From Haliotis rubra (taxonomy: Eukaryota): a DNA stretch of 64,000 bases. The notes under the pieces are model-generated. The model was not told the DNA's origin. It did not search any database and saw only the letters and a list, made by a program, of their open reading frames with translations. A program made the translations under genes and the position numbers. The DNA is taken from assembly GCF_003918875.1 (NCBI RefSeq), contig NW_025767213.1, forward strand, positions 124,001 through 188,000, written 5' to 3'. Shown here one piece after another: positions 2,504-29,241 of this stretch (positions are counted from its first letter, which is position 1; every line of letters starts with the position of its first letter).

Positions 2504-2547
2504 TCATTCATTCATTCATTCATTCATTCATTCATTCATTCATTCAT
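2504..2547. repeat. (TCAT)n microsatellite
   Basis: Direct tetranucleotide run. Confidence 0.95.
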
Positions 2548-5046: not shown

Positions 5047-5069
5047 AACACTTTATTGTGCAAGGAAGG

Positions 5070-5802: not shown

Positions 5803-8487
5803 TCACTCCTTCGTCGCTGCATCTGTAAACAACAAACAACTTTAGTAAGCTGTGTGAATGGTAAGCTGGTTTTAATTCCTTTTTAAAGTTTATTTCAAAT
5901 GTAAATCGTTATGTTTTCTTGTTCTGGGATGAAACCTGAAAATCATTAGACATTTTCCATGATGGCAAAACCCGCAAGTATGGTACTGACGGACCAGGGT
6001 TAACTATTGGGTGAATCTAAGATTCGAACCCATGGTCAGTGGAACAGCAGCAATTTAGAACACTGTGTCTACAGTGCATCCTCAAAAAGAAAAAATACGC
6101 CATGCATATTTTTAATGTTTCTCATCTCTTGCTTTTTGTGGACGGGCTTAAAACATGAATAAAAATTTTTTTTTAAATGTTGGCACTAATTGTGCATCTT
6201 CTTTTGTAAAATTTGAAATTTAAATGACCCAATAATGACTTTGAAATAATGTTTAATGTAGATTTAATCCCTTTGCTTCGAAAACAATGTATATAGATTG
6301 ATGAAGAAAGATCAAGATGAGCTGGTTCTAGAGTGGATGAAATGTTAGCGTACGCAGGGCATAAATTTCAATTTCGGGGGCCAAAACTGGCTTAAAAATA
6401 TTTTTAGTGTTTGAATTGTTTAAAGCAGTCAGGAGGTGGGAAACACAAGAGTGAGTGAGTGAGTGAGTTTAGTTTAGTTGTAAATAATCGACTCTGGACC
6501 TGACAATCCAGTTATCAACAGCATAAGAGTCGATCTACGCAATTGGGAACCGATGACCACCCGATCCCGTTAGTCGCCTTTCACGACAAGCATGGGTTGC
6601 TGAAGATCAATTCTAACCCGGACCTTCACGGGTGGGAAACACAAGAAAATATAGACAGCCATACCACGAAGACGTCAGTCCAAGAAAGTTCGACACTGTC
6701 AGTCTTTAAAAGCACCTACAGGCTGAATGTAATCGTGTTGACTTCTTTATTATACATTGGTGATGAATGGGCATGACGCGCTATGCATTATATAGCAGTG
6801 GTTATCCATAACATTCCTAGTCGTGTACACCAGCATTATTCATCATTTCAGTAAAGCTAATAAATAATAAGTGACCGAGTCAAAATAACTTTTAAGCATC
6901 AAGTTTAAACATTAACGATCATATTCTCATGTCTTGTATATAATTACGATAATATACACTTCCTTACTGTTATCAGCCGATGTCATCAACACTTTTACAT
7001 CTCTCGCATTGAATAACACCTCGTCCCGCGATTGGTCAATATCCCTTCCCTGTTTGATGTCTTCGCTCTCAAGATCTGAAACGAATCATGTTCAATTAAC
7101 CTATGTTGGTGATCTAGAGCCGTTCATACAGATATGATGCAATCACGTTAAATAGTGTATATAGAAACTAAGTGTATAAGGCGTAGATAGGTTAGAGGGG
7201 TTGATTATGACATCAAACGTTGTCACATGTTCTATTCCGATTTTGTTCAACCATGAACACTACGTAACACGTGTTGCTTAGACTAACTGATTTCGAATTT
7301 GTTTGGTTGGTTGGTTTGTTGTTTAACGCCACACAGTCCTTGGATGGGTGACCGTGTTTGGCAGTTTGACTCCTGAGAGTTTCTAGGACTTCACTTCTGC
7401 CCCACAACGACTGACTGACTGACTGACTGAATATGGTTTTACGCCGCTTTTAGCAATATTCCAGCAACATCACGGCGGGGGACACCAGAAATGGGCTTCA
7501 CACATGTACCCATGTGGGGATTCGAACCCGTGTCTTCGGCGTGACGAGCCAAAGCTTTAACCACTAGGCTAACAACACACACACACCCACCCCCACCCCC
7601 ACCCCCAACGAAGCACATGTGATACATGTGGTCTTACCTTAGGCAAGTGAGTTTGTTCAAAATTGCCTCGGTTCACCCAGCAGGATGGGTCATGTGACTG
7701 TAACCTTCTAACGCGTAACAGGCAGCTTGGGTTATCCGGGGTAATAATAATCAGATTCTGATTACAAGGTCCAGTGAGCAACTAGTCAGATAGATACTAG
7801 GCGCTAAATATATGAATTATTATCATTACACTCAGCAATATTCCAGCTATATGGCGGCGCTCTGTGAATCGAGTCTGGTCTAGACAATCCAGTGATCAAT
7901 AGAATGGGCATCGATATATCGATTGACTGTATAACCATATGATTAAGCTTTGTCTATTGCAGTTGCATTTTTACAAGCGATGTTTTTTATATTGAATCAC
8001 ACGTCAACCAGTGGAGGATATGCTAAATTAAATTACTAAATTAAATTAAACCTTCCGAAATTCCAAACGATTTTAGCAATTGTAAGACCTTGACATTGAC
8101 AGCAAAGCTGTTCAAAGACTATCAGTGCGAGCTGTTATCCTTAAATTCCTCACGTTACACATTTTGTTGAGTGCTTGTTCAGCAATGGATATCATGTGCA
8201 TATTGCATTAATAACGTATTTATATTCATTAGCCAGTGGATCCGCGACGACACCTTTGATGCTCTCTGCAGCAATACTATTTTTTTCTTGGAATTTCTTG
8301 TGAAACGTGGAGAAAGTTTAAGGCACTCACCTCTTCCATGTAACTTCGTCGTACTTGTTATCCACCGGGACCTATTCATCCTCCTAGTAATTCTCCTCCA
8401 ACTTCTCCTCCCACGCCACTTCCCGTTAGATGCGTCCAGACACACAAGGACCAGCAGCAGCAGCAACAACAAGGGCAGCAGTTTCAT
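5803..8487 (-). CDS. Gene A: spliced secreted cationic (antimicrobial-like) peptide precursor, 94 aa; coding exons 8487-8331, 7075-6968, 5822-5803
   Basis: Acceptor ttgttccag at 8500-8499 and ATG at 8487. Donor AGAG|gtgagt at 8330 (phase 1). Acceptor gtttcag then a 108-nt open exon ending ACA|gtaagg (phase 1). Acceptor ttgtttacag then ATGCAGCGACGAAGGAGTGA. Joined protein: MKLLPLLLLLLLVLVCLDASNG-KWRGRRSWRRITRRMNRSRWITSTTKLH-GR-DLESEDIKQGRDIDQSRDEVLFNARDVKVLMTSADNNAATKE*. Confidence 0.8.
6451..6633 (-). mobile_element. Family B element in the last intron of gene A
   Basis: 16-bp TSD ggtgggaaacacaaga at 6435 and 6631. Confidence 0.88.
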
Positions 8488-9606
8488 CACGCTCAGCTCT
8501 GGAACAACGTGAAGAGTGAAGCATCACTTTCATGGTCAGTATCAGGACAAACGCCAACTGTGTAAACCAGCTGTGGAAGCTGACACGCAACCAACAGAAC
8601 ATACATTAATCAGAGTACTGCTTGAGCTTTCAAGACTGAATTATGTGATTTAAGTTCGGCTTGCAAATAAGAAAACTAGTGATGGCACCACATGTAGCAC
8701 CTGCCACTCACACCAATTTCCAACAAATATTTGAGATGATTTGACATATAGTGAACAAAAGGAAATAATAAACACTACAGCTTAGAAATATCACAAGACA
8801 TTGTGTATGCACCACTTGTCACTAAAATGGTACATGTCTTTTATTGTTTAAAGACTTACTTCAGTTTCCTGATGGCGTTCAAAGACATACTTCAGTTTCC
8901 TGATGGCGTTCTGTGAAAAATCGGGTCAAGGTCAGACAATTAAATTATTGAAACAATGAGTATCGATTTACACAACTGAAAAAAAAATGATGACAGGCAT
9001 CTCATGTAGGTGAGTCTGGCCACCAAATCCCACTAGTCGCCTTTCATGGCTTCTTACGACCAGTTCTAGTCGGGAAGTTAACAACAGGGAAGAGGATAAT
9101 ACAAGCAGTGGGTGAAATCCAGTCGGGCCAGTAAATCTCCAGTCACTAGCCCGACTGGCTAGTGAATTTTCATGGGATCATTTTGTAAATATCTCTCAGA
9201 CTTGATCAGTTATAATACACTTTTAAATCCTGCAAGATTATGGCCTGATAAAAAATGTTCATCATATTAGCAGCTTAATGATGAAACCCGTGTCATGCCG
9301 ACAGTATCCTATTCTCATTTATTTTTGAAAACTTTTGCTTAGTTTCTACATTCAAATGTCGCGCAAGTGAATTATTTTGTGGGCTAGTAACTTTCAGGCA
9401 TAGCTGGCCCGACTGGCTAACAAAATTTGTAATGCTTGTTGAATGCAAACACTTTTTGGGGGAAACAATCTAAGTCTAAAAATATATTTTTGTATCTTAG
9501 CAAAAAATGTCACCAAATCCCTCATTTCTATTATTTTAAAACGCGCACTTACTCACACAAACTGTGAACCCGTAATATACACATAAACAACAACATATAT
9601 ACTCAC

Positions 9607-9710
9607 AAACCGGCTGTTCTGTAAGGACAGGTCGTGGAAGCTGTGTTTGGCTATAGGTATACGGACCACTGATGGAAGAGATCAGTGAAGCCTGTAGTTA
9701 TAAAAAAAGC
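9607..9710 (-). promoter_or_regulatory. Probable TATA-like promoter and non-coding exon 1 of gene A
   Basis: On the minus strand, TTTTTATAA near 9700 is followed about 90 nt later by donor ttt|gtgagt (9606-9601). An upstream exon is required because the ATG lies 11 nt after an acceptor. Confidence 0.4.
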
Positions 9711-11189
9711 AGCGGTAACAGCGTTAACGTCACCGTGATTTTCAGGAGTAACCTACATTTCAAGGTGTGCAACTCAGATGCGATAAACATATGCTCTCAT
9801 TGAACAAACTGATTATCTCATGCCTACGGGGCTTTGGTGCAATCGACCAAACGGAGTCGAGCAGTAATACATGGGCTGTTGATTATTAATATTGTATAAC
9901 TGAATTATCTGTAAAATAAATGTGCTCATAGTATACCAAAATATCACTTCACTTTTTTTCTCATTTTGTCACATAAAAATATCTGAAGGTAGTGTTTCGA
10001 TATTATTGCCTGATGAGCTCTGAAATCTGATTTTCTTCACAGAAAGTGACCAGATACTAGTGAGTGATTGAGTGTGTGATTGAATGTGTGAGTAAGTGGT
10101 GTTTATATGTTAAAAATTACATACGACTCGTAGTTTTTAGCGCAATCGATACATCACTAAACGTAATCATGAAATCGCACCACTATATTGCCATTTACAG
10201 GGAGTAACCTTGAGTAATGATTTATTTCAACCTGCCTTGGAACAGATGTTCTCATAGACTCCAACTAGGACCCGACCCTTATCACCTTGTTGTATACTGT
10301 TGCAATATCGGTATATGATCAGGCGTGGACGTGATGGCAACAGGAGTACATTTCCTCATTAGCTGCTGTTGTTACCGATGATCAAACTACTACATGTAGT
10401 GAGATGACGGTGTTTCACCACTACTACTGAGCGTATTCGCTGCTACAGAAATGATGGCATATACATAGGGAATCTTCCATGCGTTGAGTATAATATCGGG
10501 TCTTTCCCAGGGCTTTCGAGAAGGTGACGATAGGCATATTATCGTTGAACATGAAACATGATGTTTTATCCGACATATGGAATGTCCTATTTTGTGCAAA
10601 TTTTGCGTAGTATGTTAAATTGAACTATTTAATTACAAATTTAAAACATTGAAACGGAAATTCTCTACCTAACACGTGTGTGTGTGTGTGTTTCACCACC
10701 CACTTACTATGTAGTTCTGTTTTTTAAACTTCAAACAAAAAATGGGAAAATATTTGAGATTAATAACAGTCTTTACGCTCTCTTAAGACAAACCGTAAAG
10801 CCTATCGACATATTTACGAGACCTTTGTAGGAAGCGAATGAACACATGAAGAAGCTAACCCACAGTTTTCTTCATAAATTACCACCTGCTATTTTCTGCC
10901 CTGCTTGTGTGAAACTAACGCCACTGAAAAGTCAAAATTATATATTTTCTTACAGAGCACACGCGTGATAGAGATATTTAGCGGGAAGGTAACACCTGCA
11001 TGAAGCAGTCTTGTCAAAGTGTTACGTTAACTGCAGCGAAAAATCGAGTGTTATGCTCACACTGTATACTGAAAGTATCATATTTCTAAAGAAAACATGA
11101 ATATAAGACATGAATTTAGGATACACTTACACATTCCACCAGTTAATAGTTTGGATCATTTTGTATGGTAACGTCATATAGGTTTAGTT

Positions 11190-11880
11190 CCGATTTTGAC
11201 AGTCCCAATCTTGACAGTGAAAATTCACACTTCTGTAATAGATCTAGCCATTTATCCCAATTTTGACAGTGAGCTCACCGGTCGTCCCATTTTTGACAGA
11301 GCTCGGCTCACACATGTTAATTAATCCCTGATTAGCCAGTGGTTGTGGGGGCTACTGTAACAGAGGACTAAAACAAGAAAGACTAAAGCTAAAACAGTTT
11401 ATTCTTGAAAGTCAATCACTTCAAAGTCACCAATCACTGAGCAACGCTTCCAGCCAGCACACTGCCACAGGCAGAAAGATATGACGCCACATCTCTGTCA
11501 CATGTCATGTATTCCAAACCAAGTTGGTACAAAGTTGCTGAAGCATTTTCAACACGGCGTCTCTTCATCTGTGTCTGTCCAAAAACAATGATCCTGCTAA
11601 CGCTGTTGTCATCTACCAGTAGAAAGTCTTCTCCTCGGTCTGTTGTAGCCCATTCTCCATCAAGCTGTAGTTATTGGGCGTCTTTTGGAGTACGTGGGAC
11701 CTTCTTGGTTCTTTGTCTGTTCAGACTTGACTCGATACTCTCGTACATCTGAAGACGCTGTAAAAAATGGGACACTACAGATTGTGGCACATCTCCGAGG
11801 AATGTTAACGATAGGACTAGTGAGGTTCTTTAGTTTGTATCTTACTTTATCATGACAGCCAGGACCCAACTGTGATCCAG
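11190..11880 (-). mobile_element. Mutator/MULE-like transposase remnant with subterminal repeats
   Basis: A minus frame reads SIESSLNRQRTKKVPRTPKDAQ*LQLDGEWATTDRGEDFLLVDDNSVSRIIVFG, typical of the segment preceding invertebrate MULE domains. Four cc.attttgacag-type repeats at 11190-11300. Confidence 0.5.
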
Positions 11881-11902
11881 TTGTCATTCTTGGTACAAAA
11901 TA

Positions 11903-13488
11903 TACTCAGAAGCAAAAAAACGTCAGTACGTATTAAAAATGAAATAAGCACTGTAATCAAATCATTACAGAAATGGACATAATAAGCCAATCAAAAACAT
12001 TTTTTGTGTACAATATCTTGACACATCAATGAATAACACTGCACAATTTCAAGACATTACGTGAACGTTTGCAGTCCATTCAGACTCTTGACTTCAGTAT
12101 CTAGTGTGACCACCACGAGCGGCACAGAGTGCACCAATCCATTGATTAAGGCCATTGGCCCCCGTAACCACACTCTGAGAAATGCAATAAATCGGCTGTG
12201 TTCGGCCTTGGTATGACATTACTCAGTCTCCTCTGAATTCCATCCCAAAGATGTTCAGTTGGGATTAAATCAGGACTAAGGGCTGGTCACTGCACAATGT
12301 TGACACCGTTCTGCTGTAGGAAGTCCCGTGTAACTCTGGCAGTATGGGCCTGGGCGTTATCATGCTTGAAACTGTTGTTCCGGTGACGTGCGAATTGTGG
12401 CATGACGTGGGGTCTGAGAGCTTGGTCGATGTAGCGCACCGCTGTGATGCCGCCTCCTCTCCATGGACCAAGGTTCTGGAACACCACAGGACCCACTCTC
12501 TGGTTCAGGCCTATTCCACCCCATGCCATGATGCTTTCACCTCCCCATGAGTCTCTTTCCATAACACATTGGTCTGAGTAACGCTTGCCACGTCGTCGCC
12601 ATGTTCTTGTTCTGCCATCTGCAGTTGATACGCAGTACCGACTCTCATCTGTGAACAGATCCATTGCCTGTAACGCCAGTTTTCGTAGACGTTCACGCCG
12701 ATGACGAGGGGTGAGGATAGGTCCAGGGTGAGGTCTACGGCAACGGAGGTTCCCGCTGTTAAGACGTCGGCGTACTGTATCTGTACTGATTGGTCTTCCG
12801 TGTGTTCCCACTGTCTGCGTGCTGTTTCGGATGCCTGCATGAAGGGATTCTGTACATGATGTTGCACAACATGGCGGTCTTGTGGTGACCCTTGAGAGTG
12901 GAGCGATCATTTGTGGTGTTGGTGGCCCGGAAACGTTGCTGCAGCCTGTAGATGGTCCGAACGTTGGCCTGGAAGTTATTAGCCAGCTTCAAGTCTTCCT
13001 AGCGCCTGGTTCCTCTGAGCTGTCGTGAGTCGCGGCATCCTGCTGACGTTGTAATGTGAACAGGGGCGTAGCTACCATTATAAAAAAAAGCCCGGGCTGA
13101 CACGTGATTTTTGCTAAAAAGGTTGGGCAAGCCCTCAATACTATCTAAATATAAAGCTTTGCAACCTATCGGGCTTACACGAGAAAAATGGCTTGCTACG
13201 CGCCTGGCGAATGTTTCTACCAGGTTGGGGTGCATTTTATAGGGCCGGTCCTTGTGAACAGCACGTGCAGCATGAGTTGCATGAAACACATGGAGAACAC
13301 CGTACCATCTCCGAAGTCAGGTTGCGTTTTTGAGACCATTTCCTGGGTTCAATTCTTAGTTTATGAAGGAATGTCAGGTAAAGTTGGAGATGTTGTCAAA
13401 AATAAACAATCAAACCATTAAATGAGTTTACTGTTATACGTTTATGCGAAGGAAAATTCCAAACTGACGTTTCTTTTGCTGCTTAGTA
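11903..13488 (-). mobile_element. Tc1/mariner DNA transposon with decayed transposase (13038-12094)
   Basis: TIRs of about 25 bp (TACTCAGAAGCAAAAAAACGTCAGT / ACTGACGTTTCTTTTGCTGCTTAGTA) flanked by TA. The transposase starts MPRLTTAQRNQALGRLEAG, contains FTDESRY, HDNAQAH and NPTEHLWD, and ends GGHTRY*. Stops and frameshifts are present. Confidence 0.92.
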
Positions 13489-14618
13489 TATATAGTCACT
13501 GAGACAGCTTCGTTTCAACTTAGATGCTGATATTTGTGATGCCTCACGTGCAAGACGTGTAATTAAACATTGCCATATGGCGCCTTATGTTGTGTAATTT
13601 TTAGTACATATATAAATCAACCTTATTAAATTATGTACTGAATGTACTGAATGTACTGAATGCACTGAATTATGTACAGGTAAACATCGATAAAACGCTT
13701 TACATAAACACGTTAATAAAATGAGCAAAATCTTAAAGTGAACTCTGCTGTACGAGATATTTTCATAGGTTATGGAGGGAGTTTTGTCGCATTTATTGTA
13801 CAAGTGCAATAGCTGGAAATTACAAATATACTCGTACAAGCAACAGGTGCGTACTGATGTGGAAATACTTAATGCAGAACATCCCGGCCAGAAATACGTA
13901 CTTACCCTCTACCAAACATTTAACGAGTACAATATATATCAAATCTCATTTGTTAAACCTCCATGACCCCTATTCATCACTGCGTTAAAGTACCCCACTT
14001 GCTATTACCTTGTGGGGTAATGGTTGGCTTTGCGCCCTTTCCTAACACATGGGCCACAAAGCAATATTTTGTGTTACAAAGCACGGGGCAATACGATGAC
14101 CGGCAGTGAATGAGTGTGTATGGAGCAGCGTTGTATATAGTTAGTATGGCGTTGCCCCAAACCACATGAAAATGCAACAAATCGTTCAAAATCAAAATAT
14201 CCCATTTATAATGAAACATAGATATGTAACTATTTGCTATTTGACTTGCTAGAATGTCACAGATGTACAATCTTGACGTAAAACACTGACACTGGGGTTG
14301 TTGTTTTTATAATGTTTTTGTGTTTTTCATTGAATTCTACAACCCACACTCTACAAAACAACTCATCTATGTATCTCGGTTGTAGTGTTACCTCATCAGC
14401 AACATATAAAACTGACACATCCTGTTCACACAACATGGAAAGTGATTTAGTGCGCATAAAAGCCAGCCTCCATGCTCCATTGCCCAATAATCATTTCTCG
14501 CACCTTTCCAACGCAGAGGACGGTATCACCTTTCATGAAGGACCATTTTGTAAATAGTTAATGTAGGTGTAAATAGTTTTTTAACACTGTCTCTCTCTAT
14601 ACATACTAAACATGGGTG

Positions 14619-14969
14619 GACCGCCTCCGTGGTGTAGTGGTTAGAGCGTCCGCCCGGAGAGCGGAAGGTCGCGAGTTCGATCCCCGACCGCGTCATACCA
14701 AAAGACGTTAAAATATGGTACTTGTTGGTCCCTGCCTGGCGTTTGGCATTACTGGGTACAACAAGGACTGGTCGGCTCGGAGTCAGTATAATGTGTCTGA
14801 GTGGGGTATTCATGCTTCACTGCGGCATGGTATCTCAGTGGGCTAGCACTATAAAACCAGCTTCAGTCTGGGCTAGTACAAGCAGCCGCACATACACATA
14901 CACGAGCATGCACGTCGTCATATGAGCGAAATATTCTCAAGCACGACGTTAAACCCAATTTCACCTCAC
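14619..14969 (+). mobile_element. tRNA-derived V-domain SINE (RUDI-like, family C)
   Basis: A-box TGGTGTAGTGG and B-box GTTCGATCC, V-domain-like GTCATACCAAAAGACGTTAAAATATGGTAC, (cacct)n tail, TSD ctaaacatg at 14606 and 14970. Confidence 0.85.
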
Positions 14970-16512
14970 CTAAACATGCGCGATATGAGTCACCCGAGGT
15001 ATTATGAAACACCATCCCATGACTGAGAGAGTTTCTTTTATCTGATTCAGTAGCTATGGAGGAGACTCCCGTCTCTTTTCATTTGGTAAACAGAACGTCC
15101 GGGTATTGTTCCATATTCTGACTTGTACCCTTCGTTTCAGTGTATTTTAAAGCAAATAATTGCCTTGCCCTTGTATGTGGGTATGACGGGTGTTAGAATT
15201 CAGGATTCGCTCACCTGTTCATCTGGTATTATAACTATTTCACCGACTTAAAACCATTTGAGTCAGTAAGTGGGTATTGCTGTAAGCCACTGTTAGCAAT
15301 ATTCCAGCAATATCACGGCGAGGGAACACGAGAAATGGGCTTCACATATTGTACCTATGTGGGGAATCGAACTCGGACATTCAGCGTGACGATTGAACAC
15401 TTTAACTGCTGGGCTACCCCACCGCCCCAGAGGCATCAGTAGGTTTGATTCGTCGTCTAGGCAACATTTCATCAGAGTTTATTTATGTTTTACACCATGC
15501 GTTCTGCGAAATAAATAAACATAACATGGATTAATATTCATTATATTCGTTAAACAAGAAAATAAGTAAATAAATAAATGTAATTCTTCTGAGAAATGTG
15601 CTGGAACTCTGTGTGTGCAGGAAATGTAACTCCAGTTGTCTGTAAGTAAATAACTGGTCGCAGGATTGTACCGATTACATCAGGTGTTGTCTCTGAAGAC
15701 AAACTGTCCAAACGTAGTTGCGCCTTTTCACATTTGTCTTCGTTTGCAATCGTTTACTGAGGTGCAGAATCGGTCGGGTAGCCTAGTGGTTAAAGCGTTC
15801 GCTCATCACGCTGAAGATCCGGTTTCGATTCCCCACATGGGTACAATGTGTGAAGTCCATTTCTGGTGTTCCCCAACGTGATATTGCTGGGATATTGCTA
15901 AAAGCGGCGTGAAACTGAACCCACTCACTCACTATTTGTTTGTGATTCATAGACGCCAGCTTATGATAAAGTCGTGCAAAGTTTCCTGCTTACACCTGAG
16001 ATCTGGAACCAATATGGACATGGTTTTCTTGCTTTTACTGCAATTATTTCATGGAAATGGCCGTCTGTGATATTTACTCTAATATTTTAATGTAAACTGT
16101 TATTTAACTGTAAATACTTGTGTTCAATCTTTAATGTTTTACTGTACTTTGGGAAATAATATATGAACGTTGGGCAAATGTTCAAACTTTGTCACAGCCA
16201 ACCGATTGTCAAAGCAAGTCCATCTATCAAATGCATAATCTGATGGTGATAACAGATGCCATTATTGTTTTACACCTCACATACGCGCGATCCACGCAAC
16301 TGACACTACACGTAACACAACTTCCATGAACACAGACACATGGCGCCAGAGATAAAACTTATCAGGAAGTACCTGGTGCACGCTTGGCACTGTTTTATCG
16401 ATTGCACTCCTCTTCAAAACACGTGCTATCAGCCAATCCATGGATCTGGATATGGTCCTTGATTACATGACAGAAGGGATGAGTGAGTGAGTTGGGTGTA
16501 ACGTCGTGTTAA

Positions 16513-17787: not shown

Positions 17788-18731
17788 TTATATCGGGGAA
17801 CATTTTAATTAGAAATAATCAATACTGGCATGGGACAACCTACCTCAGTAAATGCATGGTAAATTAACGTTGGTTCCGGGAAGGTTGTAACGTAGCACCA
17901 TGCTTTTACCAAATACACGTATTATATACAAGCTCAAAATGTCCATTTTGATGTGTGCAACGGTGTGACTATTTCATAGGCGGATCATGAGTTTTAGTTC
18001 GCTTCCCTATTAAATTTCAGCGTTTACTCTAATTCAACCCTGAAAACGCCTTAGTAACTGTGTATACACGGTGACACCTCGAATTCATTTGGACGAATTT
18101 CAATTCGCGGACACCTCTTGTCATCATTCATTTTCAGCGATCTGTATACTTTCACTGCTTAGTTGCCCTTTACGCCCAATGGAATTTGTTTCGTTGGATT
18201 AGAGGGACTGCACATTCTTTGGCGTTAACATTTTATCATGAATATGGTGTATCTCATTGTCTAAATTGTAGTCGACACTGATTCTGGCACAGTGTGGGGT
18301 GTTGGGGTAGCCTAGTGGTTAAAGTGTTTGCTCGTCACGCTGAAGACCCGGGTTCGATTCACCTTATGGGTACAATGTGTGAAACTCATTTCTTGTGTCC
18401 CTCACCGTGATATTGCTGGAATATTGCTAAAAGCAGCGTAAAACTGAACTCACTCATTCACTGTGGTACTCGGGTATGTCGGATTTTTGTTCGGGTATGT
18501 CGGATTTTGTGTAAAAGCCCAAAGACTACGAGGATTTGAGACTGTTCAATGTTTCCTGATGGGGATGCAGAACAGCCATTATCATCAGTCGAAGTGGCGC
18601 ACCTGTTGTGGCCTCCAATGTGGCTTCGTACAGCTTGTGTTACGGAAGGAGGGTTCATGTTCTGTGCGATTGTGTCCTGATCACACCACAAGATCTTTTA
18701 TCTGTACTTGTCAAAAATGCCACTGTTTTAC

Positions 18732-18783
18732 TATAAATACAGCGACAAGTTCTGGTCGATCACAAAACCCTTTGACAAGAGAG
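18732..18783 (+). promoter_or_regulatory. TATA box and short non-coding exon 1 of gene B
   Basis: TATAAATA at 18732-18739 and donor gag|gtaaac at 18784. The matching acceptor tttag|G ATG lies at 19291-19296. Confidence 0.6.
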
Positions 18784-19293
18784 GTAAACTGTGTCTTTCA
18801 TTTACTCTTTCCACCATCTTCTGTGGGGCAAGCGTTTCATTCAAATATCCATGTTGTAATTGTATATTTCAGCTCGGCTTCAGTTCATGCCTCTTAGTAT
18901 ATCATGATAAATGATGTGTCTTTTTTGTAGTTTTATCAGTGTCTGAGGGTTTGCCTTGCGACAAGTTTAGCTATACCACAGCAACATGTAATTAATCTCT
19001 TACAGTAAACTGTATGCATCGGTATACAAAGATTCAATTCATATTTTCCTGGTATTTTGGATGAAGATAGCTCAATATATCATGATAAATTACGTATATT
19101 TCAGCTCGGCTTCAGTTCATGCCTCTTAGTATATCATGATAAATGATGTGTCCTTTTTGAATTTTCATCAGTGTCTGAGGTTTCGCCTTACGACACTTTT
19201 AGCTATACCACAGCAATACTGTAATTAAGCTCTTCCAGTAAGCTATGTGCATAGGCATGCAAAGATTCATTTTATATTCTCCTGGTATTTAGG

Positions 19294-21551
19294 ATGAAGA
19301 TAGCTCTGGTGTTTCTCCTGCTGGTGGTTGTCTTCGTAATCCAGGACACAGATTCCTGGAGAAGAAGGAGAAGAAGAAGGTGGTTCAGAGCTCCAAGAAT
19401 ACGCATCAGGAAGATATTCCGACCCGTCACTAAAGTCATAAAGAAGATAAGGCCGGTGTTGAAGAAAATTATCAAACCCATCGTCCAAGGAGTCAAGGCA
19501 GTTGTCAAACCCATTTTGAAACCATTACAGGCAAAGGTGTGTGCCCCGCTCCAGTGCCTAACTGGCCGAGACCTAACTTGGCAGACGGAGCCTGACAATT
19601 CTGTGGAAGAAAGAGGCACTGGAAAAGATCTGGAAGAACAGTCTGACAAGATGATGACAAAGAAGAGCGCAAGAGATGGAGGACTGGTTGGAGATGTACG
19701 ACAAGGAGGGTCGAGTCTTGGAGGGTCTGAATGAGCTGGTGAATACCAAGCGGGACGTGAGGGAACTTCACCAAGTCCTGCAGGATCCTGTCAGGTCCAA
19801 GAGGTTGTTGAAGTACGTGGGCAAGGCGCTGTGTGGAAAGACCGGCGGTAGCCAGGATGGAAGTGAAGATGGCCAGGGTCCGGAAGAGGACGTTGATCAA
19901 GTTGTCACTGTCCCTTACACTGTCATTGAGTACGTGACAGCAGCTCCTGCCGGTGAGTGATTATGTAAATCGCGGCCAAAAGGGTAAAGAACATTATAGA
20001 GCGTTATACATATGGTATCAATATTGATTTTGTCGATGACAAGTGTTCTCCATTCAAAGTTTAACCAACCAAACAAAGATAACGGCTGTGCAGTGTTTTC
20101 TACTTTCGATTTACATCTTAGACGTCATATGATATAAGGTCATCCGTAATGTGTTACTCATTTGAAACCTCAGCAAGGAAGAGAGCGGGTTGGCGTAACA
20201 AATCATATAATATAAAAAATGTTTTAAACTATTCTTCACTAATTGTGTAACTATTTTGTGAGATTTTAAAATGCGGGTTGGCGTCACAAATCAAATGATA
20301 TAAAAAATGTTTTAAACTATTCTTCACTAATTGTGTAACTATTTTGTGAGATTTTAAAATGTAGATCACGGCTACATGCAATGTTTTCGATTCACATCTA
20401 AAACATCATATTGATATTAGGTAATATATAATGTTGTATGTGATGCCCATGTAAGAAACAAAGACATGACAAGAGCGGACGTGCGTAAACAATAAATTAG
20501 TATATAGAATATTACAAAAACTATTCTTCACTAATTGTATAACTTCTTTCAGATTTTAAAATGTGGATCACGGCTACATGCAATTTTTCTACTTTCGATT
20601 CACATCTAAAACGTCATACTGATATAGGGCATCTGTGATGTTGTATGCAGTACTCATTTATTAACTTAGCCAGGAAGAGAGCGGGCGGTCGTAAAATGAA
20701 TCATTGTGAAAATATTTTAACAATTATTCTTCACCAATTGTGTTTTAACATATTCTATGAGATTTAAAACTTTAATCACTGGTTATAATTTTAAACTAAT
20801 TTTTCATGAAGATCGAGTCATGTTGGTTCAGAAACATTTTTAATTACAGTTAAAAAAAATATAAATCAAACTGACCTGGGATTTTTATGAGTGTGCGAGA
20901 GTAAGAGTTTTTCTATTACATCAGGGCACAGATTTCGTTAGACGGTTAAAATAGAGATAAGAAATTTATTTTACAATTTCACGTCGGGGTGAAAATACAG
21001 GGCCGCCATGCGGGAGATGGGAAACACATTCGAGAATATGTATATCCACGATAAACACATTTATATGCAAATTGTAGTGGCAGGTGCTACCGGTAGAGCA
21101 GGACAACCTTTCCGTGAACAACACATATTTTCAGTGACGCTTTAATATAGTTTCAACTACTTCGAACGTCATGTAGAATCGATTTCAGCAGATATTGAGA
21201 GTGATTTTCTATCTGACTGTGACGCAAGCCATAGTGCCTAATCCACATTTTTGTAATCTCTGCCAGGCTTCTGTAATACACAACCTTTAAACAAGCAAAT
21301 CTAGTTTTCTTAGGTTCAGTTTCTCAGTTTCCAAGGCCTATGAGATAGTTGGGGGTTTTTTTCAGTTTAAATGGAGTTATTTGGTACTATCAGAATTTTA
21401 TAGTTTAGATAACATAGCGTTAGTCTATGTAAGCGAGTAATCGTTAGTTAACTATACTTACATTATAAATGTATTTTATAACTGTGAGTTAAACCATCCT
21501 TCCGAAACTGAAGATATAAAATTTAATTTTGGATACTTTTTTTCAGGGTAG
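19294..21551 (+). CDS. Gene B: secreted multi-peptide cationic (antimicrobial-like) precursor, about 220 aa after correcting a +1 frameshift near 19663; exons 19294-19952 and 21547-21551
   Basis: Signal peptide MKIALVFLLLVVVFVIQDTDS, then a 69-aa peptide (13 R, 11 K, no D/E) followed by GR-DL. ORFs 19294..19734 and 19676..19960 join if one A at 19663/19664 is removed, giving MMTKR-AQEMEDWLE. Donor GCCG|gtgagt at 19953, acceptor ttttttcag|GG TAG at 21546, AATAAA at 21605-21610. Confidence 0.8.
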
Positions 21552-22067
21552 ACCTCGAGAAGACTCCGTATAACCCACTCATCTGTACTGAGTATGATTG
21601 TCTCAATAAAAACAAGCAATGCATAAAAACGTGTTTCTTATTTCGTACAGTACAAAATGCTACTGACATAGTTCAAATGCCGAATGTCATTATATCCTAC
21701 AAGATCGATGCTCATGCTGTTCATCACTGGATTGTCTGGTCCAGATTAGATTATTTTACAGGCAGCCGCCATATAGCTGGAATATTGCTGAGTGCGGCGT
21801 TAAAAACAAACAACAAACAACATATGCTTGTCGTATGAGGCGACTAACGGGATAAGCTGACCAGGCTCGCTCAGTTGGTTCATGCATGCCATCGTGTCCC
21901 CAGAGTACAGACCAATGCTCATGAGACCAATCACTGGATATTCTGGTTCAGACTGTTATTTGCAGACCGTCTTTATAGAGCTGGAGTATTGCTGAGTGCC
22001 GCTTAAAACAGCAAAGAAACAAACAATTGTAAATGATGTAATCAATTCACCAGACAACCAGGAAGTT

Positions 22068-22310
22068 GACTGTAATTACAGCCAGGGCTAGCACCACTAC
22101 TCTTATAGTGTAACTCCTACAGAGAGTTATGGTTATTTGTTTGATGTTTACCGACGCCCCACCACTATTCTGGAGATAGGCGGACTGTAATTACAGCCAG
22201 GACTAGCACGCCCCACTATTCTTATAGTGTAACTCCTACAGAGAGTTATGGTTATTTGTTTGATGTTTACCGACGCCCCACCACTATTCTGGAGATAGGC
22301 GGACTGTAAA
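22068..22310. repeat. Tandem duplication of about 118 bp
   Basis: gactgtaattacagccagg...ggagataggcg present twice. Confidence 0.9.
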
Positions 22311-22972
22311 ATCCAGTGGTTGATATTATGACCAAAGTTTCTACAGTGAGAGCGACGTTTCGGTGATGTTCACTTGCTCAATGAAGGTGTTAGAACCTAC
22401 ACAGAAACATCGCTCTGCTGGAATATTGCTAAAAGCGGCGTAATAAAGAAGTTGGTCTTCCATATATTGTTATCCTTCCTAACTCACCCAGCTTCTAAAT
22501 GCCTTTCAAAGAGGTTAAAGTTTCCCTTGTCTGAAAAAGAGACAAAATCCACGGTTTGAACGAGTGAGTGCGTGAGTAAGGTTTTACGCCGCTTTTAACA
22601 ATTTCCCAGCAATATCACGGAGAAACCAGAACTGTTGTCTCCACAGATTTTCAAGCCCGATTTAGGTGAGTGTATGTCATCGTGCCCCCATGGCTTTTCT
22701 TAACGTGTCAGATACTGGACTGTCGGTGCACACTTGAGTTTATTGACCTCTTATATTGTTGAGTGTGACGTTAATCAACACACAGACGGTCGGGAATCAT
22801 CGTATGACGATTATTAACAAACAACTAACCACATCAAGAAAACGGAGGTACGTAACCTATCCAAACATCTAAACGCATTCCTTCCTTATGGAAGAAACAC
22901 TGAACTAGCTTATGCCAACACAAACGTACATCCTGACAACTTGTACATCTCAGAGAGACAGGTGCGATATTA

Positions 22973-23384
22973 TGCTTCCTTTCAAAAGTTTAGACTCACT
23001 TAAAACACTCACTATAAACTGAATAATTATATATATATATATATGGTTACATTTCTGATTTCTCCACTAACTTGAGGAAACAACTACAAACCCTATGCAG
23101 ATCAAAATTGCTGAAAAGCATTAATTTTGCAAATATCGTGTGAATAGGTGCGTTTTTGTGTAAAGTTTTGTTAAGAATTCGACAATTTTCACTGATCTTT
23201 ATCATTTATTGAACTCATGACAATAATCTTTTCAACATTACGAATTTGTTTACAATACATCAGTTCATGTGTAAACAGTACCTTTAAACAGTATGGAAAA
23301 TTAGCAAAATTTAGTATTCAACAGTTGCCTGAAGTAAGTGGTTATATTTACACTAGTGAGCCTAAACTTTTAAAAGGAAGACTA
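22973..23384. mobile_element. Second copy of the 54098-54522 MITE
   Basis: TIR core AAAAGTTTAGACTCACT and a collinear internal sequence. Confidence 0.85.
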
Positions 23385-24747: not shown

Positions 24748-25217
24748 ATGAATTGAGGAATGAGTTAGTGGACAGGCGACCGTCTTTGTATTTCTTACAC
24801 TCAGTGACGTCGGCTTATATTAAGTCAAGGATTATATCGAACCATTATTTAGCAAGAAGAGGTGATACACAATTGTATGAAGAGTAGTTGCTTCTGATAA
24901 GACTTGCAAAATCAAATCAGGGAATTTACCTCAGAAGTGCATCATAGACATAAGGTGTATTTATTATTACACTTTTAAGGATGACCTCAGGTCATTCACG
25001 AGAATCACCTGCTCACGTGACCTGTCAGAGTTTAATGATAGTTATGTTATGATAGATATGATATTAATATTGACTGTTTCTTATAAGTTCTTAAGTTTTT
25101 TAAAGTTTCTATTAGGAAACAGGTAGACATTCAGATGTGTTAATATGACCAAATTGATTTGAAGACAATTGAGAAGAAAAACATAAGGGCTGTAAACACT
25201 GCCATACACTGTATATT

Positions 25218-28200
25218 GTTGAACACTGTTGACACTTTATTGTAATATGATGTTCGTGTAAGGCCCTCCATATGGTCGGACACTGTTGACACTTTATTGT
25301 AATATGATGTTCGTGTAAGGCCTTCCATATGGTTCGGACACTGTTGACACTTTATTGTAATATGATGTTCGTGTAAGGCCTTCCATATGGTCGGACACTG
25401 TTGACACTTTATTGTAATATGATGTTCGTGTAAGGCCTTCCATATGGTTGAACACTGTCGACACTTTATTGTATGATGTTCGTGTAAGGCCCTCCATATG
25501 GTCGGACACTGTTGACACTTTATTGTAATATGATGTTCGTGTAAGGCCCTCCATATGGTCGGACACTGTTGACACTTTATTGTAATATGATGTTCGTGTA
25601 AGGCCCTCCATATGGTCGGACACTGCCGACACTTTATTGTAATATGATGTTCGTGTAAGGCTATCCATATGGTTGAACACTGTTGACACTTTATTGTAAT
25701 ATGATGTTCGTGTAAGGCTATCCATATGGTTGGACACTGCCGACACTTTATTGTATGATGTACGTGTAAGGCCTTCAACGTGTCGGACACTGTTGACACT
25801 GTATTGTATGATGTACGTGTAAGGCCTTCAACGTGTCGAACACTGTTGACACTGTATTCTATGATGTTCATGTAAGGCCTTCCATATGGTCGGACACTGA
25901 TGACACTTTATTGTAATATGATGTTCGTGTAAGGCCTTCCATATGGTCGGACACTGTTGACACTTTATTGTAATATGATGTTCGTGTAAGGCCTTCCACA
26001 TGGTCGGACACTGTTGACACTTTATTGTAATATGATGTTCGTGTAAGGCCTTCCACATGGTCGGACACTGTTGACACTTTATTGTAATATGATGTTCGTG
26101 TAAGGCCTTCCATATGGTTCAACACTGTTGACACTTTATTGTAATATGATGTTCATGTAAGGCCTTCCATATGGTCGGACACTGTTGACACTTTATTGTA
26201 ATATGATGTTCGTGTAAGGCCTTCCATATGGTTGAACACTGTTGACACTTTATTGTAATATGATGTTCGTGTAAGGCCTTCCATATGGTTGAACACTGTT
26301 GACACTTTATTGTAATATGATGTTCGTGTAAGGCCTTCCACATGGTTAAACACTGTTGACACTTTATTGTAATATGATGTTCGTGTAAGGCCTTCCATAT
26401 GGTTGAACACTGTTGACACTTTATTGTAATATGATGTTCGTGTAAGGCCTTCCATATGGTTGAACACTGTTGACACTTTATTGTAATATGATGTTCGTGT
26501 AAGGCCTTCCATATGGTTGAACACTGTTGACACTGTATTGTATGATGTACGTGTGAGGCCTTCCACATGGTCGAACACTGTTGACACTTTATTGTAATAT
26601 GATGTTCGTGTAAGGCCTTCCACATGGCAGAACACTGTTGACACTTTATTGTAATATGATGTTCGTGTAAGGCCTTCCACATGGTTGAACACTGTTGACA
26701 CTTTATTGTAATATGATGTTCGTGTAAGGCCTTCCACATGGTTGAATACTGTTGACACTTTATTGTAATATGATGTTCGTGTAAGGCCTTCCACGTGGTC
26801 GGACACTGTTGACACTTTATTGTAATATGATGTTCGTGTAAGGCCTTCCACATGGTTGAACACTGTTGACACTTTATTGTAATATGATGTTCGTGTAAGG
26901 CCTTCCACATGGTTGAACACTGTTGACACTTTATTGTAATATGATGTTCGTGTAAGGCCTTCAACATGGTTGAACACTGTTAACACTTTATTGTAATATG
27001 ATGTTCGTGTAAGGCCTTCCACATGGCAGAACACTGTTGACACTGTATTGTATGATGTACGTGTGAGGCCTTCCACATGGCAGAACACTGTTGACACTGT
27101 ATTGTAATATGATGTTCGTGTAAGGCTATCCATATGGTTGGACACTGCCGACACTTTATTGTATGATGTACGTGTAAGGCCTTCAACGTGTCGGACACTG
27201 TTGACACTGTATTCTATGATGTTCATGTAAGGCCTTCCATATGGTCGAACACTGATGACACTTTATTGTAATATGATGTTCGTGTAAGGCCTTCCATATG
27301 GTCGGTCACTGTTGACACTTTATTTTAATATGATGTTCGTGTAAGGCCTTCCACATGGTCGGACACTGTTGACACTTTATTGTAATATGATGTTCGTGTA
27401 AGGCCTTCCACATGGTCGGACACTGTTGACACTTTATTGTAATATGATGTTCGTAAGTAAGGCCTATGATGTTTATGGTTCCAACACTGTTGACACTTTA
27501 TTGTAATATGATGTTCATGTAAGGCCTTCCATATGGTCGGACACTGTTGACACTTTATTGTAATATGATGTTCATGTAAGGCCTTCCATATGGTTGAACA
27601 CTGTTGACACTTTATTGTAATATGATGTTCGTGTAAGGCCTTCCATATGGTTGAACACTGTTGACACTTTATTGTAATATGATGTTCGTGTAAGGCCTTC
27701 CATATGGTTAAACACTGTTGACACTTTATTGTAATATGATGTTCATGTAAGGCCTTCCATATGGTCGGACACTGTTGACACTTTATTGTAATAAGATGTT
27801 CGTGTAAGGCCTTCCACATGGTTGAACACTGTTGACACTTTATTGTAATATGATGTTCGTGTAAGGCCTTCCACATGGTTGAACACTGTTGACACTTTAT
27901 TGTAATATGATGTTCGTGTAAGGCCTTCCACATGGTTGAACACTGTTGACACTTTATTGTAATATGATGTTCGTGTAAGGCCTTCCACATGGGAACACTG
28001 TTGACACTTCCACATGGTATTGTAATATGAAGGCCTTCCACATGGTTGAACACTGTTGACACTTTATTGTAATATGATGTTCGTGTAAGGCCTTCCACAT
28101 GGTTGAACACTGTTGACACTTTATTGTAATATGATGTTCGTGTAAGGCCTTCCACATGGTTGAACACTGTTGACACTTTATTGTAATATGATGTTCGTGT

Positions 28201-29241
28201 AAGGCCTTACAGGCACTTGACACTTTATTGTAATATGACAGGCCTTCCACATGGTTGAACACTGTTGACACTTTATTGTAATATGATGTTCGTGTAAGGC
28301 CTTCCACATGGTTGAACACTGTTGACACTTTATTGTAATATGATGTTCGTGTAAGGCCTTCCACATGGTTGAACACTGTTGACACTTTATTGTAATATGA
28401 TGTTCGTGTAAGGCCTTCCACATGGTCGGACACTGTTGACACTTTATTGTAATATGATGTTCCCGTAAGGCCTTCCACATGGCAGAACACTGTTGACACT
28501 GTATTGTATGATGTACGTGTGAGGCCTTCCACATGGTCGGACACTGTTGACACTTTATTGTAATATGATGTACGTGTAAGGCCTTCAACGTGTCGGACAC
28601 TGTTGACACTGTATTGTATGTCGTACGTGTGAGACCTTCCACATGGTCGGACACTGTTGACACTGTATTGTATGATGTACGTGTAAGGCCTTCAACGTGT
28701 CCAACACTGCTGACACTGTATTGTATGATGTACGTGTTAGGCCTTCCACATGGTCGGTCACTGGTGACACTGTATTGTATGATGTACGTGTAAGGCCTTC
28801 AACTTGTCGAACACTGTTGACACTGTATTGTATGATGTACGTGTAAGGCCTTCCACATGGTTGAACACTGTTGACACTGTATTGTATGATGTACGTGTGA
28901 GGCCTTCAACATGGTCGGACACTGTTGACACTGTATTGTGTGATGTACGTGTAAGGCCTTCCACATGGTCGGATACTGTTGACACTGTATTGTATGATGT
29001 ACGTGTGAGGCCTTCTACATGGTCCAACACTGTTGACACTGTATTGAGTGATTCACGAGTGAGGCTCTCAAATGGACCAACACTGTTGACATTGTATTGT
29101 GCAATGCACATATAAGGCCTTTGACTTGGACCAACACTGCAGACATTGTATTGAGAGACATACAGCCTTTAACACTTACCAACACCATTGACAATTTATT
29201 GAGAGATATACGGCCTTTGACACCTACCAACACTGTTGACA
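25218..29241. repeat. 57/54-bp minisatellite array, about 4 kb
   Basis: Unit aacactgttgacactttattgtaatatgatgttcgtgtaaggccttccacatggttg. Confidence 0.97.

What the first reader, a model, noticed from the sequence alone, without database searches (positions are those of the whole stretch)
19357..19569. Gene B main peptide: 69 aa with 24 basic residues, poly-Arg head, proline-punctuated amphipathic repeats and a C-x4-C tail
WRRRRRRRWFRAPRIRIR is followed by repeated hydrophobic-(R/K)-P-hydrophobic units (FRPV, IRPV, IKPI, VKPI, LKPL) and ends VCAPLQCLT-GR. It combines a cell-penetrating-like Arg7 tract, a kinked amphipathic helix and a small C-terminal Cys loop. I do not recognise this combination from a named family; the function is inferred.
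Basis: partly seen in the sequence, partly recalled or inferred. Interest (0 to 1): 0.8.

Follow-up and report, generated by a model that had tools for sequence, protein, structure and literature searches.

The report
Abalone-only secreted polycationic helical peptide gene
The peptide belongs to a real, spliced and expressed abalone (Haliotis rubra) gene for a 220-residue secreted protein found only in abalones; its strongly conserved, very basic helical front half looks like an antimicrobial peptide, but that role is untested.

Summary
Window 19357-19569 (+) encodes exactly the stated peptide: 69 aa plus GR, 24 basic residues, an Arg7 head between two Trp, seven prolines and a C-x4-C loop.

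It lies in a real gene. RNA contigs show three exons: a 5'UTR exon (18655-18783), exon 2 (19293-19952) and exon 3 (21547 onward, which adds the rest of the last Gly codon, then the stop codon and AATAAA).

The window carries one extra A at 19659-19661. All four read sets and all orthologues lack it. The true precursor is therefore 220 aa, not the 146-aa ORF: signal peptide, basic peptide (+25), acidic linker, a conserved helical domain with TKR and RSKR sites and a third Cys, then an acidic tail.

Orthologues exist only in Haliotis (H. asinina, H. rufescens and one Logan contig), all named "uncharacterized". A profile search of 1.84 billion proteins, Pfam and PDB gave nothing else.

The basic region is the most constrained part (dN/dS 0.15). 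It has helical periodicity (1 of 2000 shuffles matches) and AlphaFold2 models it as one long helix.

Best reading: precursor of a membrane-active host-defence peptide, similar in layout to mussel myticalins but not a member of that family. Function, processing sites and tissue are unverified. The scan has noted other orphan secreted basic-peptide genes elsewhere in this genome.

The parts
18655..18783 (+). Exon 1, 5'UTR only. Contains two upstream ATGs (18657 and 18717).
   Evidence: an 802-nt contig from run X1 joins 18655-18781 to 19291-19953; donor GTAAAC follows 18783.
18784..19292 (+). Intron 1 (GT..AG), ending 1 nt before the ATG. It holds a 232-nt tandem duplication (18862-19073 and 19094-19306) that copies the intron end and the first 13 nt of the CDS.
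   Evidence: repeat families D8 and D10.
19293..19952 (+). Exon 2, carrying almost the whole CDS. The ATG is at 19294.
   Evidence: The orthologues are colinear with it.
19294..19356 (+). Signal peptide, 21 aa, with predicted cleavage DTDS|W.
   Evidence: The sequence shows a hydrophobic core at residues 3-16, with S at -1 and T at -3. It is conserved in the orthologues. The cleavage site is inferred.
19357..19383 (+). W-R7-W head, made of purine-rich AGA/AGG codon repeats. Its length and its W/F content vary between species.
   Evidence: It is disordered in the AlphaFold2 model.
19384..19539 (+). Cationic amphipathic core with a [RK]-P-[VIL] motif every 8-11 residues.
   Evidence: moment 0.58 at 100 degrees, matched by 1 of 2000 shuffles; one helix over residues 14-68 of the peptide, pLDDT 80-86 in the middle; nearly invariant across species.
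19540..19557 (+). Cys83-x4-Cys88, a putative disulfide loop.
   Evidence: One search gives the coordinates; both Cys are invariant, with spacing of 4 or 7.
19564..19569 (+). Gly-Arg, followed by Asp. Putative cleavage and amidation junction.
   Evidence: Invariant GRD in all four sequences. Gene A and its paralogue have the same GR|DL junction. That it is cleaved here is inferred.
19570..19658 (+). Acidic, poorly conserved linker.
   Evidence: (dN/dS 0.33).
19659..19661 (+). AAA run holding one extra base compared with every read set. It shifts the frame in the window.
   Evidence: table 4: '19659 left out 1' in X1, X15, X6 and X9 at full depth. The orthologues read straight through this point into the second frame without a break.
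19661..19858 (+). Conserved helical C-terminal domain, in the second frame of the window. TKR is at 19745-19753, the furin-type RSKR at 19793-19804 and the third conserved Cys at 19832-19834.
   Evidence: helices, pLDDT 56-70; dN/dS 0.22; generic three-helix bundle only.
19859..19952 (+). Acidic Gly/Glu/Asp tail, then a conserved VTVPYTVIEYVTAAPA end.
19953..21546 (+). Intron 2, phase 1, GTGAGT..CAG.
   Evidence: table 5: joint 19951>21546 (cut +1) in contigs from X6 and X9. Also.
21547..21630 (+). Exon 3. It supplies the last two bases of the final Gly codon, the TAG stop at 21549-21551, the 3'UTR and AATAAA at 21605-21610. The 3' end is approximate.
   Evidence: H. asinina isoform P0004 ends in the same way..AAPAG.

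Best explanation
Gene B is a Haliotis-restricted three-exon gene. It encodes a 220-aa secreted precursor.

Proposed mechanism:
1. The signal peptide is removed at DS|W (inferred).
2. The pro-form carries a +25 N-terminal module: a Trp/Arg head, then a helix of about 55 residues that is amphipathic and proline-kinked, then a small Cys loop.
3. This module is joined through a conserved GR|D junction to an acidic linker, a small conserved helical domain and an acidic tail (net -12).
4. The C-terminal part most likely keeps the cationic module soluble and harmless during export.
5. Proteolysis at or near GR|D, and at the conserved RSKR site, releases the cationic peptide, possibly amidated at Thr90.
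6. The Arg/Trp head docks on anionic microbial surfaces and the amphipathic helix inserts into and disrupts membranes.

Shown: the gene model, transcription and splicing, conservation, purifying selection, and helical amphipathicity as a prediction. Inferred: every processing step, the disulfide, and the antimicrobial or membrane-active function.
For: - Spliced transcripts, and very unequal abundance between samples: depth about 23 in X1 against 4,000-16,000 in X9.
- Orthologues confirm the 220-aa model.
- No relatives outside Haliotis in 1.84e9 representatives, and no Pfam or PDB match.
- Charge is +25 for the basic module and -12 for the rest.
- The core has a hydrophobic moment of 0.58 at 100 degrees, matched by 1 of 2000 shuffles, and about 45% hydrophobic residues.
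- AlphaFold2 gives a single helix over residues 14-68 of the peptide, with pLDDT up to 86. The two helix faces separate cleanly.
- The basic region is the most constrained part, at dN/dS 0.15.
- The precursor layout and gene layout (5'UTR-only exon 1, intron just before the ATG, phase-1 second intron) match those described for myticalins in PMC5577615.
- A poly-Arg tract joined to an amphipathic helix is a documented potent antimicrobial design (abstract of PMC12371492).
- Two further secreted Arg-rich precursor genes with the same GR|DL junction lie within 25 kb.
Against: - There is no functional, peptidomic or tissue evidence.
- GR|D lacks the upstream basic residue usual for monobasic cleavage.
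- The peptide is full of RR, KK and R7 sites that convertases could cut.
- 69 aa and +24 is far outside the usual range for linear antimicrobial peptides.
- The family looks single-copy and is under strong purifying selection, with conservation beyond what amphipathicity alone would need.
- The C-terminal half is a conserved, probably folded domain with its own basic segment, not a simple anionic spacer.
- Three conserved Cys leave one unpaired.
- There is no kappaB-type site near the promoter. This is weak evidence.
Confidence: 0.5

Rival explanations
1. The protein is not processed into a free peptide. It acts as an intact two-part secreted protein whose polycationic helix binds polyanions such as mucus glycans, extracellular DNA, shell or periostracum matrix, or cell surfaces. 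Its helical and acidic C-terminal half gives solubility, self-association or a second binding surface.
For: - Both halves are under purifying selection.
- The C-terminal part is a conserved helical bundle with a third conserved Cys that could bridge to the Cys loop or form dimers.
- The GR|D site is non-canonical.
- Abundance is extreme in one sample, as is usual for structural or secretory products.
Against: - GR|D, TKR and RSKR are invariant in all species, which suggests proteolysis.
- Conserved motifs of the protein are absent from 6.2 million characters of supplements to the H. laevigata shell-matrix proteome and from the supplements to the H. asinina mantle secretome paper.
Confidence: 0.2
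2. It is a prohormone or signalling-peptide precursor. The active products are the short conserved peptides bounded by TKR and RSKR, or the peptide that follows RSKR. The basic region would be a sorting or carrier module.
For: Conserved dibasic sites flank conserved stretches in the C-terminal half. The precursor has a signal peptide and a Gly-basic junction of the amidation type.
Against: - The basic region is the most constrained part of the protein (dN/dS 0.15), so it is not a spacer.
- Conservation covers long helices rather than short peptides.
- The Gly-Lys after the third Cys is not conserved; it is GQ in the H. rufescens group.
- The motifs are absent from the supplements to the H. discus hannai ganglia transcriptome and peptidome paper.
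- There are no relatives outside abalones, whereas neuropeptide families are usually wider.
Confidence: 0.1
3. In this particular genome the gene is a broken allele. The extra A at 19659-19661 is real, and the animal makes a truncated 146-aa product that still carries the whole basic peptide but lacks the conserved C-terminal domain.
For: The extra base is in the assembly. No gene with this product is on record, and no H. rubra orthologue appeared in the protein search.
Against: - All four read sets lack the base at full depth, including two from the same species.
- It sits in a homopolymer.
- The contig belongs to GCA_003918875.1. From my own knowledge, not checked here, this is a long-read-based assembly in which homopolymer errors are common.
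- The downstream frame stays open for 97 codons up to a perfect splice donor.
Confidence: 0.1

Closest known systems
Myticalins and modiocalins (linear cationic antimicrobial peptides of Mytilus and Modiolus; PMC5577615, PMC12294457)
   Same: The precursor order is signal peptide, strongly cationic Arg- and Pro-containing peptide, a Gly-Arg at the junction, then a negatively charged C-terminal extension. The gene has three exons: exon 1 is 5'UTR only, intron 1 ends just before the ATG, and intron 2 is phase 1. Both families are restricted to one taxon. In neighbouring gene A the phase-1 intron lies right after the GR junction, as it does in myticalins.
   Different: No sequence similarity was detected. 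The junction is a single Arg, not Lys-Arg. The peptide is 69 aa (myticalins are 23-42), has two Cys (myticalins have none) and is a predicted amphipathic helix. The C-terminal part is 128 aa with a conserved helical domain and internal convertase sites. Intron 2 sits at the last codon. The gene is single-copy and conserved rather than multigenic and hypervariable.
Frog brevinin/esculentin-type peptides with a C-terminal 'Rana box' (from my own knowledge, not tested here)
   Same: A long cationic amphipathic helix, often with a proline kink, ending in a small disulfide-closed loop.
   Different: The loop here is C-x4-C or C-x7-C, has no Lys and is followed by two more residues. In frogs the acidic propiece comes before the peptide, not after it. 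There is no homology.
Natural antimicrobial peptides that join a poly-Arg tract to a helix, such as tilapia piscidin 4 (PMC12371492)
   Same: A run of consecutive Arg residues is attached to an amphipathic helix. That paper shows the poly-Arg part starts membrane destabilisation and the helix then inserts.
   Different: The abstract reports runs of 3-5 Arg as typical and studies a C-terminal poly-R tail. Here the run is 7 Arg, N-terminal and flanked by Trp. The helix is more than twice as long.
hdMolluscidin, the known very basic linear antimicrobial peptide of abalone gill
   Same: Same genus, with an extreme content of basic residues.
   Different: [quoted passage not shown] PMC11767717 describes molluscidins as non-amphipathic with dibasic repeats. 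The sequence searches here returned only Haliotis orthologues of this gene and no molluscidin.

Membership tests
Myticalin/modiocalin | Detectable sequence similarity, especially in the signal peptide and the anionic extension | tested here: not met
   The profile search of 1.84e9 proteins returned only the Haliotis cluster. The word search returned only Haliotis proteins.
Myticalin/modiocalin | Precursor order: signal, cationic peptide, cleavage site, anionic C-terminal extension | tested here: met
   signal residues 1-21, +25 region 22-92, and the rest at -12. The extension is much longer and partly basic.
Myticalin/modiocalin | Lys-Arg dibasic site between the peptide and the extension | tested here: not met
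   The junction is T-G-R|D in all four sequences.
Myticalin/modiocalin | Mature region of 23-42 aa without Cys and with no predictable secondary structure | tested here: not met
   69 aa, two conserved Cys and a predicted long helix.
Myticalin/modiocalin | Three exons: exon 1 is 5'UTR only, intron 1 lies just before the ATG, and a phase-1 intron follows soon after the cleavage site | tested here: inconclusive
   The exon count, the 5'UTR-only exon, the intron 1 position and the phase of intron 2 all agree. However, intron 2 lies 128 codons after the junction. In gene A it lies directly after GR.
Myticalin/modiocalin | Gill-specific expression and antibacterial activity | not testable with these tools
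   Run names and tissues are coded.
Linear alpha-helical cationic antimicrobial peptides (a functional class) | Secreted, net positive, about 40-60% hydrophobic, amphipathic helix | tested here: met
   This rests on prediction only.
Linear alpha-helical cationic antimicrobial peptides (a functional class) | Release of the peptide from its precursor, and killing of microbes | not testable with these tools
   No peptidomic or assay data were found. No paper holds the sequence.
Proline-rich antimicrobial peptides | High proline content with repeated Pro-Arg-Pro type motifs and an extended, non-helical structure | tested here: not met
   7 Pro in 71 aa (10%) and no PRP motif. The core has helical periodicity, and the region is modelled as a helix.
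Molluscidins | Dibasic-repeat peptide whose precursor has no signal peptide and no anionic pro-region | tested here: not met
   A signal peptide and a C-terminal pro-part are present. The family description comes from PMC5577615.
Rana-box peptides | C-terminal Cys-x4-Lys-Cys ring at the very end of the peptide, and an N-terminal acidic propiece | tested here: not met
   The loop is C-APLQ-C followed by LT, and its spacing varies between 4 and 7. The propiece is C-terminal. The family definition is from memory.

The most novel reading that the evidence does not exclude
Abalones have a lineage-specific class of host-defence peptide. It would be a roughly 70-residue, +24, proline-kinked amphipathic helix with a Trp/Arg docking head and a C-terminal disulfide loop. 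It would be exported fused to a small folded helical pro-domain that masks it until convertase cleavage. It would be encoded in a local cluster with two other Arg-rich secreted-peptide genes that share the GR|DL junction, and the layout would have arisen independently of, or be very anciently shared with, bivalve myticalins.
Probability: 0.35. Interest if true: 0.6.

Novelty: new variant of a known kind. Interest (0 to 1): 0.45.

Why it matters
Few linear gene-encoded antimicrobial peptides are known from gastropods. PMC12294457 calls myticalins one of the very few known molluscan antimicrobial peptides without cysteines. The review PMC11767717 names only molluscidin, macins and fragments of larger proteins for abalone.

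Abalone farming suffers from Vibrio and viral disease, so a strongly expressed, abalone-specific membrane-active peptide would be a useful immune marker and a template for peptide design. Its unusual length, its charge and its strict conservation also raise a question: what sequence-specific constraint acts on it beyond amphipathicity?

On the practical side, the gene is missing from the annotation of this genome, probably because of a single-base homopolymer error.

Tried and rejected
- **Family and structure searches.** Pfam on the ORF, the second-frame piece and the peptide gave only sub-threshold noise. The word-based protein search found only three Haliotis clusters. The HMMER profile search of 1.84e9 representatives found only the query's own cluster. 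The PDB sequence search found nothing.
- **Atlas.** The first call gave no usable hit.
- **Full-length AlphaFold2 model.** Mean pLDDT was 42. A structure search with it gave only generic three-helix-bundle matches at Z of 7 or less, below the level stated to be meaningful for helical models.
- **Homology of gene B with gene A and its paralogue.** BLASTP was not significant and hhalign gave 25% probability over 23 columns at the boundary between signal peptide and Arg head. Shared ancestry is therefore unproven.
- **Literature.** Sequence motifs, protein accessions and LOC numbers returned 0 papers. The run accession prefix returned nothing. Supplements to the H. asinina mantle secretome, the H. 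laevigata shell proteome and the H. discus hannai ganglia peptidome held no motif. The H. laevigata genome paper has no supplements held as text.
- **Promoter.** There is no NF-kappaB-type motif near it; the window has 3 sites, all elsewhere, against 5.7 expected by chance.
- **Positive selection in the gene A pair.** dN/dS is 0.37 over aligned codons, so it is not shown.
- **Tissue of expression.** Run, organism and sample names are coded, and the Logan contig that carries P0002 is genomic DNA.
- **Two calls failed on reversed coordinates** and were resent correctly.
Full report
**Observation.** Its composition is 14 Arg, 11 Lys, no acidic residue, 7 Pro and 2 Cys in 71 residues. That gives 24 basic residues in the 69 residues that precede Gly-Arg. 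The window has no N.

**Gene model.** The peptide sits in an ORF that starts at ATG 19294 with a typical signal peptide. Laying contigs of four public runs on 18300-23300 showed the following:
- A spliced contig joins 18655-18783 to 19293-19953. Exon 1 is therefore 5'UTR only, and intron 1 (GT..AG) ends one base before the ATG.
- Contigs of two other organisms join 19952 to 21547, a phase-1 GTGAGT..CAG intron.
- Exon 3 supplies the last two bases of a Gly codon, a TAG stop and AATAAA at 21605-21610.

All four runs lack one base at 19659, in an AAA run, at full depth. Two of those runs carry the same species label as the window. Without that base, the reading frame passes from the 19294 frame into the long open frame 19661-19951, which ends exactly at the splice donor.

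The true product is therefore 220 aa, not the 146-aa ORF of the window. The last 24 residues of that ORF are spurious. The basic peptide lies upstream of the shift and is unaffected.

**Identity of the genome.** A locus fetched for a neighbouring gene comes from H. rubra assembly GCA_003918875.1, contig QXJH01000052.1. It is 100% identical to window 1-6372 over 6372 bases, so the window is Haliotis rubra. No called gene on record has the 146-aa product, and no H. rubra orthologue appeared in the protein search. Gene B is therefore unannotated here, plausibly because of the frameshift.

**Relatives.**
- The word-based search found H. asinina XP_067676144-47 (84% identity; the 219-aa isoform ends ..AAPAG, exactly as in my model), H. 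rufescens LOC124145172 (67%) and one Logan genomic contig. All are named "uncharacterized protein".
- A profile of the family, searched with HMMER against 1.84 billion representatives, returned only its own cluster.
- Pfam and PDB sequences gave nothing.
- No paper in the library holds the sequence motifs, accessions or LOC numbers.

The family is a Haliotis-restricted orphan.

**Anatomy and constraint.** The precursor has these parts:
- a signal peptide, residues 1-21;
- a basic module, residues 22-92, net charge +25;
- the remainder, residues 93-220, net charge -12, made up of an acidic linker, a conserved helical segment that is itself slightly basic and carries invariant TKR and RSKR sites and a third invariant Cys, an acidic Gly/Glu/Asp tail, and a conserved hydrophobic end.

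In the basic module, all seven Pro, both Cys, the GRD junction and nearly all basic residues are invariant in the four sequences. Substitutions are mostly Ile/Val/Leu exchanges. What varies is the head (R7, R5, or R/W/F mixtures of 9-15 residues, always starting with Trp) and the loop (C-x4-C or C-x7-C).

Nei-Gojobori estimates, window against the Logan contig, over aligned codons:

| Region | dN/dS |
|---|---|
| Basic module | 0.15 (dS 0.53) |
| Conserved C-terminal segment | 0.22 |
| Signal peptide | 0.23 |
| Linker | 0.33 |
| Tail | 0.30 |

The basic peptide is thus the most constrained part of the protein and cannot be a spacer.

**Structure.**
- The 51-residue core has its largest hydrophobic moment (0.58) at exactly 100 degrees per residue, kept in phase across the prolines. 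Only 1 of 2000 shuffles reaches this value.
- On the helical wheel one face is almost purely Ile/Val/Leu/Phe. The other carries the Lys/Arg and most of the Pro.
- AlphaFold2 on the four-sequence alignment of the peptide alone gives one helix over residues 14-68 of 71, with pLDDT 80-86 in the middle and a disordered head.
- The full-length model is poor, with mean pLDDT 42. It places three to four helices in residues 122-189 at pLDDT 56-70.
- A Foldseek-independent search with that model gave only generic three-helix-bundle matches at Z of 7 or less, which the tool states is not meaningful for helical models.

**Expression.** Contig depth differs by more than two orders of magnitude between samples. 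It is about 23 in X1, 4-6 in X6 and 4,000-16,000 in X9. The X9 contigs carry the two substitutions that distinguish the H. asinina protein (Thr19Ala and Ile38Val), so organism D is probably H. asinina or a close relative. This is an inference, because names are coded. Tissue and condition could not be learned.

**Neighbourhood.**
- Gene A lies 10.8 kb away on the opposite strand (ATG at 8487). It encodes a signal peptide, a Trp/Arg-rich peptide ending ..LHGR, a phase-1 intron, and then an acidic stretch that starts DLESED.
- A tandem paralogue of gene A, LOC124292502, lies 3.6-7.5 kb beyond the left edge of the window. It starts its peptide with RRRRR. Its signal, its ..TTKLHGR end and its acidic exon are conserved (91% amino-acid identity in that exon; 92.6% nucleotide identity over the region). 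Its cationic middle has 19 residues of indels.
- Three secreted Arg-rich precursor genes with the same GR|DL junction therefore lie within about 25 kb.
- Sequence homology between the A type and gene B is not demonstrable: BLASTP E is 0.28 and 5.1, and hhalign probability is 25%.
- The rest of the window is repeats and transposon remains.

**Interpretation.** The layout is signal peptide, cationic peptide, Gly-Arg, then a negatively charged C-terminal part. Together with the gene layout, this matches what PMC5577615 describes for mussel myticalins. A poly-Arg tract joined to an amphipathic helix is an experimentally supported potent antimicrobial design (PMC12371492). I therefore take a membrane-active host-defence peptide precursor as the best explanation, at about 0.5.

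Against this reading:
- no assay or peptidomic evidence exists;
- GR|D lacks a basic residue at P4, P6 or P8;
- the peptide is full of internal polybasic sites;
- its size and charge are far outside the usual range;
- the family looks single-copy and strongly conserved;
- the C-terminal half is a conserved domain rather than a spacer.

Rival readings:
- An unprocessed two-part polyanion-binding secreted protein (0.2). It is weakened by the invariant cleavage-type sites and by the absence of the motifs from the H. laevigata shell-proteome supplements.
- A prohormone (0.1). It is weakened by the constraint on the basic region and by the absence of the motifs from the ganglia peptidome supplements.
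- A genuinely broken allele in this animal (0.1).

**Membership.** It is not a myticalin. There is no sequence similarity, no Lys-Arg site, the size is wrong, Cys are present, and it is helical. It is not a proline-rich antimicrobial peptide (10% Pro, no PRP motif), not a molluscidin (it has a signal peptide and a pro-part), and not a Rana-box peptide. It resembles these only in how it may work.

**Novelty and score.** The gene is already present in RefSeq for two other abalones as an uncharacterised protein, and it has never been discussed in the searchable literature. I rate it a new variant of a known kind, namely C-terminally extended cationic peptide precursors. Interest is moderate at 0.45: a solid, testable candidate without functional evidence.

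The scan's notes list other orphan secreted basic-peptide genes elsewhere in this genome. I did not test those, except that I confirmed the species.

Noticed in passing
window 19659-19661: The assembly has AAA where all four read sets (two with the same species label as the window, two with other labels) have AA. This single base breaks the frame of gene B and probably explains why the gene is not annotated in this genome.
   Followed up: yes
window 18657-18783 and 19293-19297: The 5'UTR exon carries two upstream ATGs. The one at 18717 opens a 23-codon upstream ORF across the splice, and its TGA stop overlaps the main ATG (ATGA). This could couple or limit translation. Conservation was not checked.
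   Followed up: partly
window 18862-19073 and 19094-19306: A 232-nt tandem duplication inside intron 1 copies the end of the intron and the first 13 nt of the CDS. The upstream copy has TG in place of the AG acceptor, so it is probably not used.
   Followed up: partly
window 5803-8487 (-) and L002:10001-13877: Gene A has a tandem paralogue, H. rubra LOC124292502, 3.6-7.5 kb beyond the left edge of the window. The signal peptide, the ..TTKLHGR|DLESED junction and the acidic exon are conserved. The cationic middle differs by 19 residues of indels and starts with RRRRR. dN/dS over the aligned cationic codons is 0.37. The annotated paralogue reads the last exon in a different frame from the one I first read for gene A, so the 3' end of gene A needs RNA evidence.
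   Followed up: partly
P0005, P0006 and P0001 (H. asinina isoforms): RefSeq lists four isoforms. Two have an N-terminal MLLVFR extension ahead of the signal peptide, and two have an alternative 3' end (..AAPAELPERRERVVVKRNSCKNITTYH). This points to alternative 5' and 3' exon use in that species.
   Followed up: no
window 18305-18462, 15776-15933, 21702-21804, 7440-7620 and others: Many copies of a SINE-like repeat share the core ..GATATTGCTGGAATATTGCTAAAAGCGGCGTAAAA.. and show enormous depth in all runs (10^4 to 10^6). One copy ends about 190 nt upstream of gene B exon 1 and another lies about 100 nt after its poly(A) signal.
   Followed up: no
window 25140-28660 (-): A long array of tandem repeats with a period of about 57 nt keeps several overlapping ORFs of 150-357 aa open in more than one frame. 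Pfam hits are all sub-threshold noise.
   Followed up: no
window 12287-12910 (-) and 49026-51307 (-): Transposon remains: an ORF with a Tc3-type transposase HTH domain (E 1.3e-7), and an ORF with an RNase H / reverse-transcriptase-like domain (E 1.6e-10).
   Followed up: no
L002:1-23877 (+), which corresponds to the window - strand from 6372 leftwards: The collection records a gene call with a 244-aa product that spans the whole 23.9-kb locus and runs over its end. LOC124292502, and possibly gene A, would then lie inside an intron of a larger gene model. Not examined.
   Followed up: no
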